The notes under the pieces are model-generated. The model saw only the letters and a list, made by a program, of their open reading frames with translations. It was not told where the DNA came from and searched no databases. A program made the position numbers and the translations under genes. From Bugula neritina (Eukaryota; Animalia; Bryozoa), in NCBI GenBank assembly GCA_964035545.1, contig OZ037767.1, forward strand, positions 22,584,628 through 22,648,627: a stretch of 64,000 bases of DNA, written 5' to 3'. Positions within the stretch are counted from its first letter, which is position 1. Every line of letters begins with the position of its first letter. Of this stretch, positions 12,648 to 27,600 are shown in pieces.

Positions 12648-15600
12648 ATGTTGAAGTGGTACTTTAGTGCGGCTTTTGTATTGCTGGCATGTTCAAGTTT
12701 TTCAAGTAACAGTTTGGGTAATGCTCAGGTAAGACTTAGACTAAATTTTTTTCTATCACATTAACTTACAACTGCCACGTTAACTTACTGTTTCACATTA
12801 ACTTACAACTGCCACGTTAACTTACTGTTTCACATTAACCTACAACTGCCACGTTAACTTACTGTTTCACATTAACTTACAACTGCCACGTTAACTTACT
12901 GTTTCACATTAACTTACAACTGCCACGTTAACTTACTGTTTCACATTAACTTACAACTGCCACGTTAACTTACTGTTTCACATTGACGGACTTCTGTCAC
13001 AATAACTTAGTGATTTACACTAACTTGCTGCTGCCACATTAGCTTTCTGCTGTCACATTAACTTATTGCTGTGCCATGCTAATTTATTGGCGCATATGTT
13101 ACTGCCTAATTAAAAATTCAAAAATTGAGAGCAACTTTAGCAGATATTATTGTATTATTATATTATTTTAATATTTTTATCATTTGATATGATAATATTA
13201 TATCATTTTTCTTTTCTTATTGCTTTTATTCATGTCTTACATAATAGAAAATGCTAATTAACAATATATTTTTGCAAGTATAACTTTTAGTCACTGAAAA
13301 GCAGTCGGAAAACTTTGAACAACATAGAAATGTTTGCAGCTAAAATTTCAATCATATTTATTTTTTATTAAAAGAGTCCCCTGGTTTTGCTAAATTGCGA
13401 GTAAAACCGGTTTCCTATTTTGCTAAATTTAATAGAATTCGCCTTTACTAGTCAAGCAATTGGCAGAAAAGGCTATTTAGAAATTGCTAGCTTTTCAATG
13501 TCAGAATATGTCTACCATAGAGTTTTAGACTGCAGTGAAAATGTCTGATAATTTGCCTTACTTTATTAAACAAGGTTTTTGCATGTGTTATGTTTTAGCA
13601 AGGTATTGAATTAAAAATATATGAAACAATATAAGAATTCATTAAACCAATAATCTCTACTTTGTTAGACAAAAATACACTTTTATAATAAAATAAAACA
13701 AATTTCTGTGGTTTTCATCTGTACAAAAAATCCCTATCATTGCTTCTCAATATAACTTTTTACTCTGAATATTTTAAATCTAGAGTTTCACATTTTTAAG
13801 ATGCACACAATTATAATAGCTATTGCTATATGCCATGCAATGCGCAATAAACATGCAAATCATGGATACTTGGAGTTACATCATCTTCAAACTAAACATT
13901 TACCTCTAATCAATATTCTGCTCAGTCATGTTGACTTACAGCTTAGACTTATTATTTGCTGTTAGATTAGGCAGATCTTGCATAAGTTTTTGTCATGATC
14001 AGTGGGAAAGTGTTTGAGTTTATATAATACGCATTGAGTGTCTGTTTGCGCTTAACTAACAAAGTTAAAACATTTAATATCTTTATGATGTCAATGTGTG
14101 GGATGTCTCGCCAGCAACTTGCACGTAATAATAAAAGAGTTTTATTGCAAGGCTGCTGCAAAGTATAAAAAGCTGTTATGGTATAGGTTATGTGTTTGGA
14201 CCTGCTCTGCCTTGCATATTTTAGTTCCAATCATATAAGTGCAATTAAGCATAGTTTTATTTTTATATTATACTTATATCTCTGAGTTTAGGCTGTGGGC
14301 TGAACGTGCCACTTTACCAACCTGCACACACCCCTCATATTACCTGGCATGTTCACCATTGCTGACATTTCAAAATATATTAATTACTTAATTTATATTA
14401 CAGCATATGTCACAGTGTTGAGACACCATATATTTCTGCAAATGTTTTTTACCATCATGCAGGTTCTACTCTAGATCTATATGCATGTATAATTCTAAAT
14501 TGTTATATCTATTGTAATATAAACTGCATATCTCTGCATAGTGTGCGTATATGTTGATAGATTACACTACAGATTTTTTTCCTCTATTATTAACTTTTAC
14601 AGACTACCACTGTACAGCCCTCAACAGCGGCTAATGGGTTAAATCTCTTCTCGATCTTTCAATTCGACCCAAAGGATGTGGCCCAGTTCTTTTGGAGTTC
14701 CCTACGGCCCACCTATCGTGCCGGAATCAGTTCAGACCTGGGCAATGCTTCTGAATACCTAGAGTATTTCTCTAGCATGGTTAGTGTTTGGTTGAACAAA
14801 ACTTTTACTTTTGTTGTCACAAAGTTGGTGTGCAGTGCGACCTTCGTTTAAGAAAATCTGGTGTCTGGAAACATCAAGGTGTCTCTCTCTGCCAGAATTA
14901 GAGATGAGATGTCCTGTCATGATATACTGGTCTTTGATGAGCTGTGTGGTTCAATAGTGAAGTTCTTATAAACCAAAAAGCTCGACAAAGACCATTATAT
15001 CACGACAGGACATCTCATCTCTAATTCTGGCAGAGAGAGATACCTCGATGTTTTCAGACACCAGAATTTTCACATTGCACACCACTTTTGTGACGTACTT
15101 AATTGTCACAATAATTTGACTCCTTCAAACTTAGGCTTCAGAAATTCACTCAATATGTTGGAAAAGAGTGCTTTCAATTTATTGATTTTGATAGCAAGAA
15201 AAAAGCTTAAAAAGATATTAAGACTCACAAATTAAACTATTTCTTATAACATATATTGTTTGCTATGCACAACTGTGTAGCCTATATTTCAACATATGTA
15301 ATATAAGAAAATATTATGGTGTGATATAATCTATGACACATGCAAGTATGTTATTGGTTTTTACATCATAAAAAAGGTACTTATTACAGTATAGGGTGTC
15401 TGTACTAATTGTTGAATTGCTTTAGAGTGCTAAAACTTATCATCTTTTGTGATTTAGAAATTATAATCATTTCCGCTTTAGTGCCAAAGTATATGCATAA
15501 CTAAGTTATCACAAAATATTATCAATTATTGCAGCATTTCTACTTATGTATTATATTGCTACAGGTACTTGGAAAAAATGCGACGGAAAAAATATTCAGC

Positions 15601-24600: not shown

Positions 24601-27600
24601 AGTGGTAAGAAACTATAAACTATCTAGTGGTAAGAAACTATAAACTATCTAGTGGTAAGAAACTATAAACCATATAGTGTTAAGTAACTATAAACTATCT
24701 AGTGGTAAGTGACTATAAACTATATAGTGGTAAGTAACTATAAACTATTGAGTGGTAAGAAACTATAAACTATATAGTGGTAAGTAACTATTATAAGCTA
24801 TCTAAGCCAAAGTGTTATGTGTACGACATCATCTATCATCATTCAGCTATTTTTCTCTCACATAAACGACAATTCATACAAGCAAAGCTACTTTTCTATC
24901 ATAATTACTCAATATTATAGTTTTTAAAAATTCTGTACATAAAATTAAATCCTATAAATAAAAGAAAAAATACCTGTTAATTCTTTTTTTTAAGTCATAA
25001 TTTTCTGAGATCATATTTAGTACTGACCAAACATTGTTTTTTATGTAATTTTATAATTAATGTTGTCAGCTTTTCAGATACAAGTTGATTCTAGTCTGTA
25101 TTTTTATGCAAGCAATATATTCTCTTTAAATAAACAGAGTCGTGTTTACTTGCAGATGAGTTACGCATCTAGAAATGCCCTGATGCCATTTTACAAGGTC
25201 ATCGATCTCCACATCCAAAACTTCACAGATGTGAGTTAGAAATATCATATAAGTGCTAGACATCTTTTGCATCATTAGAAATCTTCAAACTACTATTAAA
25301 ATGCACCAACAAGAATTATTCATGCATCAAAAATTATATGACATAGATATATGTGACAAAAATATATGACATAGAATGACAAAACTGTGTTATGAATACT
25401 GCTATTAAATAATGTCTAAAGAACTATTTTTGAAGCCTTTACTTATCTTTGTTGTATAACAAAGTATATGGGTTAGTTGGTATGAGTAATTCCAATTGCT
25501 ATTGAATTGCTAACTTCAAATTATTATCTAACATTTATTAAGTTCAAATTCTGATGCCAGTTACAAATAAACAATTTATAATTCAGACAAAAAGTGCAAT
25601 AATCCTATTAAACACTATTTTCTTGTAGCAACAATTGAATGACTGGAAATCAATTAATGGAAAACTAGAAAAGGTTTTAAAATTTGGAATGTCTATGAGC
25701 AATGATGAGATGATGACAATGATGATGGAAATGGGTAGAGGCGTGTTTACCAATGTGATAGTGCAAGTATCCGCCAACTCTCTCCCGGAGAATGCTACTA
25801 ACATGATGGGAAATTTCATGAACATGCTAGAATCGGAAGCATTTGAACATTATATCAACACTACATTGGCTTCGGTGAGATTTAATTTTAATTTATTGTT
25901 TGGAACAACAACATGGGTCTTATGACTCATGTCATTCTCACCATCATACTATAATGCTAATTAATATCTTTTCACACTGTTTACTATAAAATGATAAATT
26001 GTGAGTTTTGATTCATGCAGAAACAGAGCTCAGAATACTGTGCATGTGTTGAAAATTATTCTGTGTAATTATAGTTACTGAAGAACGTACCAATGGGGTC
26101 TTCCTTACTCAGTAACAATGTTGTTCAAAGCATGATCAGAACTCTGTCCAGCTTCTTGTCTGACACTTACAAAGCAGTGAGATACAACACCGGAGATGAA
26201 TGGATGAGAATGACTGCTGCTGAGAAAACTTTGATAGTCTTACTAGCTGCTGACATGGTGAGTATCAGTGCGTGTGACATGGTGAGTGTCAGTGTGACAT
26301 GTGAGTGTCAGTGTGACATGGGAGTGTCAGTGTGACATGTGAGTGTTAGTGTGACATGTGAGTGTCAGTGTGACATGTGAATGTCAGTGTGACATGTGAG
26401 TGTCAATGTGACATGTGAGTGTCAGTGTATGTGACATGTGAGTGTCAATGTGACATGTGAGTGTCAGTGTGACATGTGAGTGTTAATGTGACATGTGGGT
26501 GTCAGTGTGATATGTGAGTGTTAGTGTGCCATATGAGTGTCAATGTGACATGTGAGTGCCAGTGTGACATGGGAGTGTCAGTGTGACATGTGAGTGTTAG
26601 TGTGACATGTGAGTGTCAGTGTGACATGTGAGTGTTAGTGTGACATGTGAGTGACAGTGTGTGTGTGACATGTGAGTGTCAGTGAGCGTGTGACCTGCTC
26701 TATCTAGCGGAACACGTGACATCTGCATATACAAATACGTCCTGCTTATAAAAAAGATCAGATTTAGCAATTATTTAGTATTTGAAACAACAAATGAACA
26801 TTATATTAAAAACATTGCCAAGATACCAAGATAGCTATGCTATTACAATGGCATAGAAACATATTATAGTAATATACACTAATACTGTAATTTTAAATCA
26901 AGTTGATTTCGAATGTTGTAATACATTAGTCCCAGTAAGTATTATATGAAGAAGCCTGTGTTACTATGTTTTCTGCAACTATGTAAATTTTATAGCTTAG
27001 TTATCTATATAATTACAATATAGCCCAAGCTGATTGACAGCATGCAGAAATCTTTCTACACCAGCACTGCTTACTACAGAGACCTATTGCAACCTGTTTA
27101 CACACCACAGTGCGGCTGGGACCTCAACAATGTGTCCTACACACTAACAAATGTTTTTAACGGAAAAGAAGAAGATCGTTGGGTGATTGGATGTAAGTTG
27201 TACATATTTTAACATATTGGCAGTGGTTTAAAACATTATGCAGCTTTCTGGGTTACGTACTTAGGTCATAAAAGTTGGGGGGGGAGGTTGAAGTGAAGTG
27301 GGGACAGTTAATTAAAGTATAAAATGAGAAACTGCTTGAAACAATATTTTACAGCCATTTTTATGAAATAACAAGCAATTACTATTTAATATAAAGTTTT
27401 ATAATTTTTTATCTTTAAAAAAAACGTGTTTTGCAGGTAGATTGTTATTTAATACAATAATAACTTATAATTCTAAAAGTTGTTATAGTAAATAAATAAG
27501 GTTCACCAGATAATGATAATAAAACTAGTTGGATATAAATTTTTAGAAAATGAAGTTTTCAAGAAGGTTCAAATTTTTTTAAAAAAAATGTTAATCTCAA

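What the first reader, a model, noticed from the sequence alone, without database searches (positions are those of the whole stretch)
12648..27060. NRF-6-type acyltransferase fused to a ~950-aa ectodomain built from an unrecognised helical repeat
Seen: after the signal peptide, 18 in-frame exons (~925 aa) precede the NRF domain with no stop codon and no second signal-peptide exon. A degenerate motif recurs about every 100-150 aa: [25 protein letters not shown] (ex6), [27 protein letters not shown] (ex8), [25 protein letters not shown] (ex10), [25 protein letters not shown] (ex12), [27 protein letters not shown] (ex15). Weaker copies occur in ex4, ex18 ([12 protein letters not shown]) and ex19 ([20 protein letters not shown]). 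The region is Leu/Met-rich and amphipathic-looking, with ~20 N-glycosylation sequons and only two Cys after the signal peptide. Known: NRF-6/OACYL/Drop-dead proteins are usually ~650-850 aa with only the NRF domain before the AT3 helices, and C. elegans NRF-6 is implicated in lipid/lipophilic compound transport. Inference: a lineage-specific lipid-binding or substrate-capturing scaffold coupled to an intact acyltransferase; I cannot match it to a named domain.
Basis: partly seen in the sequence, partly recalled or inferred. Interest (0 to 1): 0.8.

Follow-up and report, generated by a model that had tools for sequence, protein, structure and literature searches.

The report
Bryozoan acyltransferase with orphan helical-repeat ectodomain
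A moss-animal gene appears to place about 900 residues of a previously unnamed, sugar-decorated helical repeat in front of an ordinary NRF-6-type membrane acyltransferase; the repeat is real, conserved and apparently confined to bryozoans, but no transcript yet shows that it is physically joined to the enzyme.

Summary
On the + strand from 12648, a signal-peptide exon is followed by 17-19 short exons, all phase 0 with AG/GT borders. They run without a stop into the NRF-domain exons (Pfam PF20146 over its cut-off) and the AT3 helices.

- **The repeat.** The W..S.L.KL...L.NFDY...GE / LP......L.DF motif recurs every 99-127 aa. Five copies are statistically supported within Bugula. The weaker copies are supported through the ortholog.
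- **Relatives.** A profile search of 1.84 billion proteins found only one real relative, an 843-aa "uncharacterized protein" of the bryozoan Watersipora subatra. It has seven collinear units that pair one-to-one with the Bugula units. The other hits were a few genomic exon fragments.
- **No known family.** Pfam, PDB sequence, Foldseek and ESM Atlas searches gave no match. AlphaFold predicts an all-helical chain at low confidence.
- **One gene or two.** NCBI annotates the Watersipora repeat protein and the downstream NRF+AT3 protein as two genes. That second model, however, starts at an internal Met inside a conserved phase-0 internal exon that itself carries a repeat motif. It also has no signal peptide. 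I therefore favour one gene (about 0.7).

No RNA evidence could be obtained. The lipid-binding idea is untested. Verdict: a new variant of a known kind, of moderate interest.

The parts
12648..12728 (+). Exon 1: start codon and signal peptide (27 aa), phase-0 donor CAG|GTAAGA
   Evidence: It is the only signal-peptide-like exon found in 11000-14602 by the heuristic scan. Watersipora has an analogous exon at L009:10119-10190.
14603..15660 (+). N-terminal cap, two exons (14603-14779 and 15565-15660), 91 aa
   Evidence: Splice sites and phase. Conserved with Watersipora: tblastn E 5e-8; the second exon scores z 5.9, with 1 of 1000 shuffles reaching it.
16241..17052 (+). Unit 1: A exon 16241-16456 (weak motif copy) and B exon 16972-17052
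   Evidence: Best match is Watersipora unit 1. The B exon rests on splice sites, phase and unit spacing only.
17928..18906 (+). Unit 2: A exon 17928-18146 (DWKTSS...NFDY..FGE) and B exon 18760-18906
   Evidence: Leave-one-out score 20.1 bits, 0 of 300 shuffles. Orthologous to Watersipora unit 2. B exon z 5.9.
19309..20586 (+). Unit 3: A exon 19309-19500 and B exon 20476-20586
   Evidence: 18.5 bits, 0 of 300 shuffles. Orthologous to unit 3. The B exon is supported by splice sites, phase and spacing only.
21009..21924 (+). Unit 4: A exon 21009-21251 and B exon 21826-21924
   Evidence: 12.3 bits, 0 of 300 shuffles. Orthologous to unit 4.
22359..23574 (+). Unit 5: the A part is split into 22359-22490 and 22822-22938; B exon 23467-23574
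   Evidence: 16.5 bits, 0 of 300 shuffles. Orthologous to unit 5. B exon has marginal similarity, 28 of 1000 shuffles.
23681..25230 (+). Unit 6: A exon 23681-23923 and one or two short B exons. 25138-25230 is the likely ortholog. 24300-24392 and the 5' extension to 25078 are doubtful.
   Evidence: 19.8 bits, 0 of 300 shuffles. Orthologous to unit 6. Watersipora has only about 31 aa here, and 25138-25230 aligns to it.
25629..26257 (+). Unit 7: A exon 25629-25874 and exon 26075-26257. The 3' end of the second exon starts a partial eighth unit (EW....EK.L..L..ADM). The intron between the two exons is only 200 nt.
   Evidence: Orthologous to Watersipora unit 7. The 183-nt exon has a 183-nt Watersipora counterpart with the same phase. 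No signal-peptide exon and no AATAAA lie in the 200-nt intron.
27024..29154 (+). NRF domain exons: 27024-27192 (ends in phase 1), 28024-28232 and 29061-29154
   Evidence: Pfam PF20146 scores 31.8 bits (cut-off 27) on 27924-28262 and 17.8 bits on 29061-29165. The own-genome family search hits the same place. Orthologous exons are present in Watersipora.
30384..35863 (+). AT3 membrane acyltransferase part. It includes the catalytic-His exon 31332-31499 (..[14 protein letters not shown]..) and the terminal exon 35744-35863 with the stop codon. Exact exon borders in between were not resolved.
   Evidence: Open stretches with family hallmarks. 31332-31499 is 82% identical to the Watersipora gene whose product carries PF01757. 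Exon-level Pfam hits to PF01757 were not obtained.

Best explanation
Window 12648-35863 (+) is most likely one gene of a cheilostome bryozoan. Its product would have four parts:
1. A signal peptide.
2. An acidic, N-glycosylated, nearly cysteine-free, all-helical ectodomain of about 900 aa. It consists of a 91-aa cap and seven and a half units of about 100-125 aa.
3. An NRF domain.
4. An AT3 transmembrane acyltransferase.

Each unit is encoded by an 'A' exon and a short 'B' exon, all in phase 0. The A exon carries W-x4-S-x-L-x-KL-x3-L-x-NFDY-x3-GE, then LP-x6-L-x-DF. This layout fits growth by tandem duplication of a two-exon module inserted between the signal-peptide exon and the first NRF exon.

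The unit is a protein family without a name, so far seen only in bryozoans. The seven-unit array already existed in the common ancestor of Bugula and Watersipora.

Inferred function (not shown): the array is an extracellular stalk or scaffold. It would hold the NRF/AT3 catalytic face at, or select, an extracytoplasmic acceptor in the secreted body wall. This would be analogous to the accessory ectodomains of other AT3 enzymes, which pass an acyl group from cytosolic acyl-CoA through the membrane to an outside acceptor.
For: Shown:
- Exon chain with uniform phase 0, AG/GT borders and no stop.
- Five motif copies significant in a leave-one-out test.
- NRF domain over Pfam's cut-off.
- The repeat profile hits only this locus in the 216-Mb genome, although at least 17 NRF genes exist there.
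- Only one full relative was found among 1.84 billion representatives, Watersipora XP_067947125.1 with six matched stretches.
- All seven Bugula units pair best with the positionally equivalent Watersipora unit, and unit spacings agree within 9 aa except at unit 6, where two short Bugula exons are doubtful.
- N-glycosylation sequons are enriched in both species: 20 against about 12 expected, and 20 against about 7.
- Helical prediction: one unit gives 5 helices at pLDDT 69; the full ortholog gives 46 helices and no strand, at low confidence.

For one gene:
- The Watersipora NRF+AT3 model lies 1.9 kb downstream on the same strand.
- Its start codon (L009:25959) lies inside an exon (25824-26006). 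That exon has a strong acceptor, phase 0-0 and the same 183-nt length as Bugula exon 26075-26257.
- The 45 codons upstream of that Met are conserved with Bugula: 36% identity, E 7e-4.
- The exon itself matches the repeat profile: 11.2 bits, 0 of 500 shuffles.
- Neither species has a signal-peptide-like exon between the last full unit and the NRF exons, while both have one at the head of the array.
- A Bugula NRF paralog carries its own signal peptide 57 aa before the first NRF cysteine.
- The Bugula intron before exon 26075 is only 200 nt and holds no poly(A) signal.

Background on AT3 enzymes and NRF fusion comes from PMC12423673 and PMC12799122.
Against: - No transcript evidence. No spliced protein fragment spanning the junction exists in the protein collections.
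- NCBI's annotation of Watersipora keeps two genes. It ends the first with a 12-codon terminal mini-exon (L009:24056-24094) that has a legitimate acceptor. That could reflect real transcripts.
- Several short B exons (16972-17052, 20476-20586, 21826-21924, 24300-24392) rest only on splice sites, phase and spacing.
- The tertiary fold is unresolved: pTM 0.31-0.38.
- Nothing tested bears on the proposed scaffold or acceptor-binding role.
- AT3 membership of the C-terminal part rests on motifs and orthology. There is no direct Pfam hit in the window.
Confidence: 0.6

Rival explanations
1. There are two adjacent genes, as NCBI annotates in Watersipora: a secreted helical-repeat glycoprotein and a separate NRF+AT3 acyltransferase. 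The two would be conserved as neighbours, perhaps co-regulated or working together.
Against: - The second model starts at an internal Met of a conserved internal exon that has an acceptor and carries a repeat motif.
- It would lack a signal peptide although its NRF domain carries sequons and cysteines. A Bugula paralog has its own signal peptide.
- In Bugula only 200 nt separate the last full-unit exon from the next one. That interval holds no start exon and no poly(A) signal.
- The Watersipora mini-exon has no room for a counterpart in Bugula.
Confidence: 0.15
2. One locus makes two products. A long fused isoform is the main form. A short soluble isoform made only of the repeat array arises through an alternative terminal exon, at least in Watersipora.
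For: The mini-exon L009:24056-24094 has a canonical acceptor and an in-frame stop. All array exons are phase 0, so exon skipping or alternative ends keep the reading frame.
Against: There are no expression data. The mini-exon is not conserved in Bugula, whose intron at that position is 200 nt.
Confidence: 0.15
3. The N-terminal exons are not coding. They would be chance open frames in AT-rich introns or a decayed relic upstream of an ordinary NRF gene.
For: Some short exons lack cross-species similarity.
Against: There are seven collinear, individually orthologous units between two bryozoan families. Phase and splice borders are uniform. Sequons are enriched in both species. The Watersipora counterpart is an annotated protein.
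Confidence: 0.03

Closest known systems
NRF-6 / NDG-4 (C. elegans OAC family) and Drop-dead (Drosophila): NRF domain + AT3 acyltransferases
   Same: An extracytoplasmic NRF domain (PF20146) lies directly N-terminal to an AT3 multi-pass acyltransferase. The conserved ..R..S...V..GH segment, the WW.NLL.INN motif and other family motifs are present. The protein has a signal peptide at its start. The gene is one of many paralogs in the genome (at least 17 here).
   Different: About 900 aa of an unnamed helical repeat are inserted between the signal peptide and the NRF domain. The usual members have only tens of residues there; the Bugula paralog checked has 57. The 16 or more other NRF loci in this genome do not match the repeat profile.
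Bacterial AT3-SGNH fusions (OafB, OatA)
   Same: An AT3 membrane acyltransferase is coupled to an extracytoplasmic accessory domain thought to help deliver the acyl group to the outside acceptor (PMC12423673). This is a functional analogy only.
   Different: In the bacterial enzymes the accessory domain is C-terminal, catalytic (SGNH hydrolase fold) and well characterised. Here it is N-terminal, non-enzymatic in appearance, repetitive and of unknown fold.
Watersipora subatra XP_067947125.1 (uncharacterized protein) and its downstream NRF+AT3 neighbour
   Same: It is the ortholog. The cap and the seven units appear in the same order, unit lengths are similar, and the exon bridging to the NRF domain has the same length and phase.
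   Different: It is annotated as two genes, without the signal-peptide exon that I find at L009:10119-10190.

Membership tests
NRF-6-type (NRF + AT3) acyltransferases | NRF domain (Pfam PF20146 / IPR006621) N-terminal to the membrane domain | tested here: met
   31.8 bits against a cut-off of 27 on 27924-28262, plus 17.8 bits for the domain's end on 29061-29165; the own-genome family search hits the same place.
NRF-6-type (NRF + AT3) acyltransferases | Acyl_transf_3 domain (PF01757) | tested here: inconclusive
   No exon-level Pfam hit in the window. However, exon 31332-31499 is 82% identical (E 2e-25) to the Watersipora gene whose product carries PF01757. Family-typical motifs can be read in the open stretches.
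NRF-6-type (NRF + AT3) acyltransferases | Conserved catalytic His with the Ser/Tyr context in the first AT3 helix (PMC12799122) | tested here: met
   Read directly from the sequence..[14 protein letters not shown].. in exon 31332-31499. It was not aligned to the C. elegans set.
NRF-6-type (NRF + AT3) acyltransferases | N-terminal signal peptide that places the NRF domain outside the cytosol | tested here: met
   Exon 12648-12728 encodes a hydrophobic leader ending ..GNAQ. This rests on a heuristic; no SignalP run was available. It precedes the repeat array, not the NRF domain directly.
Pfam DUF7637 (PF24643) | Score over the gathering cut-off of 27 bits | tested here: not met
   Only one exon (25629-25922) scores, at 17.1 bits and E 0.006. 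There is no hit in the own genome and none on the full Watersipora protein.
Secretoglobin / uteroglobin | Significant sequence-profile match to the four-helix lipid-binding unit | tested here: not met
   The E of about 0.01 arises only from a construct carrying two uteroglobin copies. Per-domain scores are 8-10 bits with i-E 8-48. Foldseek found no match.
Spectrin-like or other named helical repeats | Pfam hit or a fold match standing clear of the background | tested here: not met
   No Pfam hit at E<=1. The VIA-align wide search gives only generic two-helix matches with Z<=7 over about 60 residues, with spectrin 2spc among many at Z 6.4.

The most novel reading that the evidence does not exclude
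The repeat is a new, bryozoan-born extracellular domain family. It would form a long glycosylated stalk on an AT3 enzyme, making a membrane-anchored acyltransferase that reaches into, or docks on, the secreted cuticle or skeletal organic matrix to acylate a matrix component. That would give the poorly understood NRF-6/Drop-dead family a case where the acceptor-binding part can be isolated and used to fish for the substrate.
Probability: 0.2. Interest if true: 0.6.

Novelty: new variant of a known kind. Interest (0 to 1): 0.42.

Why it matters
NRF-6, NDG-4 and Drop-dead have clear phenotypes in yolk and lipid transport, eggshell, gut and tracheal barriers. Their acceptor substrates are still unknown.

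A family member that carries a large extra ectodomain, conserved across cheilostome bryozoans, offers a handle. The ectodomain could be expressed alone and used to pull down what it binds.

The locus is also a clean example of domain birth by tandem duplication of a phase-0 two-exon module. It further points to a probable gene-model split in the Watersipora RefSeq annotation. Beyond that it is a lineage-specific elaboration in an under-studied phylum, not a new principle.

Tried and rejected
- Pfam on all repeat exons and on the full Watersipora protein gave nothing except a sub-threshold DUF7637 hit on one exon. That hit was not reproduced elsewhere.
- PDB sequence searches with the protein and with the unit profile gave only a uteroglobin lead. 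It dissolves on inspection of the per-domain scores.
- ESM Atlas by features, with one exon and with the full ortholog, gave chance bacterial hits or none. The Atlas's own model of the ortholog has pLDDT 0.61, and all structural neighbours have TM below 0.31.
- Foldseek against the PDB and the Atlas shape search with the unit model found no match. The VIA-align wide search returned generic helical hairpins only.
- The word-index protein search with the Watersipora protein found only itself. With exon 25629-25874 it found only a genomic read-through fragment, so no spliced fragment was recovered.
- Two-unit alignments for structure prediction failed, because MAFFT stacks all fragments on one unit. 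The second fold job was therefore run on the full ortholog and came back at low confidence.
- The repeat profile does not match the pre-NRF segment of a Bugula paralog, so the array is not an obvious duplication of that segment.
- My automatic exon-chaining of the AT3 part over-predicted exons and was discarded.
- A paper search for the two SRA runs that hold divergent exon fragments found nothing, so their organisms remain unknown.
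Full report
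**What is there.** The window comes from a bryozoan genome. My closest relative is consistent with that: it is from the cheilostome bryozoan Watersipora subatra (PMC12902671).

On the + strand an ATG at 12648 opens a 27-aa hydrophobic leader that ends at a strong phase-0 donor. A chain of short exons follows. Every one has AG/GT borders and phase 0-0. One further exon (16972-17052) turned up when I mapped the Watersipora protein back onto the window.

The chain runs without a stop into exon 27024-27192. That exon and the next two carry the NRF domain:
- Pfam PF20146 scores 31.8 bits, against a cut-off of 27, on 27924-28262.
- It scores 17.8 bits for the domain's end on 29061-29165.
- The own-genome family search hits the same place.

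Downstream open stretches hold the hallmarks of NRF-6-type AT3 enzymes. They include the ..[14 protein letters not shown].. segment and a terminal exon ending at the stop at 35861-35863. I did not resolve every AT3 exon border, and my automatic chaining over-predicted exons. Exon-level Pfam hits to PF01757 were not obtained. The AT3 assignment therefore rests on motifs and on 82% identity of the His-motif exon to a Watersipora gene whose product carries PF01757.

**Is the repeat more than chance?** Yes, for five copies. I left each exon out in turn, built an HMM from the others and compared the score with 300 shuffles. The exons at 17928, 19309, 21009, 22359 and 23681 score 12-20 bits against shuffle maxima of 7-9.5 bits. 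The copies at 16241, 25629 and 26075 are not significant alone.

Aligning all units of both species gives this consensus:
- W-x4-S-x-L-x-KL-x3-L-x3-DY-x3-GE, then
- LP-x6-L-x-DF.

The weak Bugula copies fall into register in that alignment.

The unit is encoded by an 'A' exon of 64-82 aa and a 'B' exon of 27-49 aa. In unit 5 the A exon is split in two. Motif-to-motif spacing is 99-127 aa. After the signal peptide the region has 901-952 aa, pI 4.7 and two cysteines. It has 20 N-x-S/T sequons against about 12 expected from composition.

**Relatives.**
- The exon-A profile hits only this locus in the 216-Mb genome, although at least 17 NRF-domain loci exist there.
- Against 1.84 billion representative proteins the profile found six sequences.
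  - Three are near-identical genomic read-through fragments of a sibling Bugula.
  - Two are divergent single exons from two SRA assemblies of unknown organism.
  - One is full-length: XP_067947125.1, an 843-aa "uncharacterized protein" of Watersipora subatra with six matched stretches.
- A word-index search with that protein found only itself.
- The Watersipora protein has the same cap and seven units in the same order.
- In a 7 x 7 Smith-Waterman matrix every Bugula unit scores best against the positionally equivalent Watersipora unit.
- Motif spacings agree within 9 aa, except at unit 6. Bugula there has two candidate 31-aa exons where Watersipora has one. Exon 25138-25230 is the one with similarity, and 24300-24392 is unsupported.

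The array is therefore old and each unit is individually conserved. Sequons are also enriched in Watersipora, 20 against about 7 expected, which fits a secreted or luminal location.

**Is it a known domain?** No test says so.
- Pfam gives nothing on the exons or the full ortholog except a sub-threshold DUF7637 hit on one exon, and that hit does not recur.
- PDB sequence searches give only a uteroglobin hit at E about 0.01. It comes from a construct carrying two uteroglobin copies, each scoring 8-10 bits.
- AlphaFold on one unit, with a 16-row alignment of units, predicts five helices at mean pLDDT 68.8 and pTM 0.37.
- Foldseek against the PDB and the Atlas shape search find nothing for that model.
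- An exhaustive aligner returns only generic helical hairpins at Z<=7.
- The full ortholog folds as 46 helices and no strand, but at mean pLDDT 53. The ESM Atlas's own model is similarly weak and has no structural neighbours.

"Helical" is thus supported at the level of secondary structure. The tertiary fold is open. The conserved residues sit at predicted helix ends and in hydrophobic positions. That pattern looks structural rather than like a ligand site.

**One gene or two?** This is the weak point. NCBI annotates the Watersipora locus as two genes on the same strand: the 843-aa repeat protein and, 1.9 kb downstream, a 735-aa NRF + Acyl_transf_3 protein.

Looking at the DNA, I found the following:
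- The last full-unit exon ends at L009:23575 with a phase-0 GTGAGT donor.
- NCBI then adds a 12-codon terminal mini-exon (24056-24094).
- The second gene's ATG (25959) lies inside an exon, 25824-26006. That exon has a strong acceptor and a phase-0 donor. It has exactly the 183-nt length of Bugula exon 26075-26257.
- The 45 codons upstream of that ATG are open and conserved with Bugula: 36% identity, E 7e-4.
- The exon as a whole matches the repeat profile: 11.2 bits, 0 of 500 shuffles. The annotated "second gene" therefore begins in the middle of a repeat unit.
- As annotated, it has no signal peptide.
- A heuristic scan finds exactly one signal-peptide-like exon at the head of the array in each species (window 12648-12728; L009:10119-10190). 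The Watersipora one lies about 100 nt after NCBI's chosen start. The scan finds none between the last full unit and the NRF exons.
- As a control, a Bugula NRF paralog carries its own leader 57 aa before the first NRF cysteine.
- In Bugula the intron in front of exon 26075 is only 200 nt and holds no start exon and no AATAAA.

I therefore read the Watersipora split as a probable annotation artefact, and this locus as one gene. No spliced protein fragment across the junction exists in the protein collections. An alternative short secreted isoform remains possible.

**How it probably works (inferred).** AT3 enzymes form a pore that lets cytosolic acyl-CoA reach an extracytoplasmic acceptor. Many carry an accessory domain outside the membrane: SGNH in bacteria, and NRF in animals such as Drop-dead and NRF-6 (PMC12423673; PMC12799122).

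Here a long, acidic, glycosylated helical array is inserted between the leader and the NRF domain. The uniform phase-0 exons fit insertion and tandem duplication of a two-exon module in what was a phase-0 intron after the signal-peptide exon.

The most economical role is a stalk or scaffold that positions the catalytic face relative to, or binds, an extracellular acceptor. In a bryozoan that acceptor would plausibly be a component of the secreted body wall.

**Verdict.** The unit is a new, so far bryozoan-restricted family. The fusion is likely (about 0.7) but unproven. The function is unknown beyond analogy. This is a new variant of a known kind (an NRF-6-type acyltransferase), of moderate interest.

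The joined spliced protein was not sent to any search or folding tool. Exons were searched one at a time by reference, and joining was done only inside local scripts.

Noticed in passing
window 12756-13065, 24475-24791, 26272-26661: Three introns of this gene begin with minisatellites placed just after the donor site: 37-mer x 8, 25-mer x 13 and 19-mer x 20. The 25-mer and 19-mer units contain donor-like GGTAAGT / GTGAGT strings, so the 5' splice-site region seems to have been tandemly amplified. This creates in-frame alternative donors, for example 26281. The orthologous Watersipora intron also holds a long tandem repeat, at L009 about 26160-26670.
   Followed up: partly
L009:10001-10190 and L009:24056-26006 (Watersipora subatra OY755166.1): The RefSeq models at this locus look imperfect. 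The first starts at an upstream ATG and skips a good signal-peptide exon (10119-10190). The second starts at an internal Met of a conserved internal exon.
   Followed up: yes
G000: C8 (13 hits between 2.57 and 10.46 Mb, e.g. 8859382-8915123) and C2:17236504-17270905: NRF-domain genes are numerous and clustered in this genome. At least 17 exon-level hits were found, 13 on contig C8 and three within 35 kb on C2. None of them matches the repeat profile.
   Followed up: partly
window 18219-18517 and 23233-23371: A long (TA)n microsatellite and a (CA)n-rich microsatellite lie in introns of the gene. They produce the spurious long ORFs on both strands seen in the mechanical ORF list.
   Followed up: no
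proteins P0005 and P0006 (SRR25569779, SRR25569782): Two divergent single-exon copies of the unit, about 30-36% identical to unit 2, sit on short genomic contigs of two SRA assemblies whose organisms I could not identify. They show that the family exists in at least two more taxa.
   Followed up: partly
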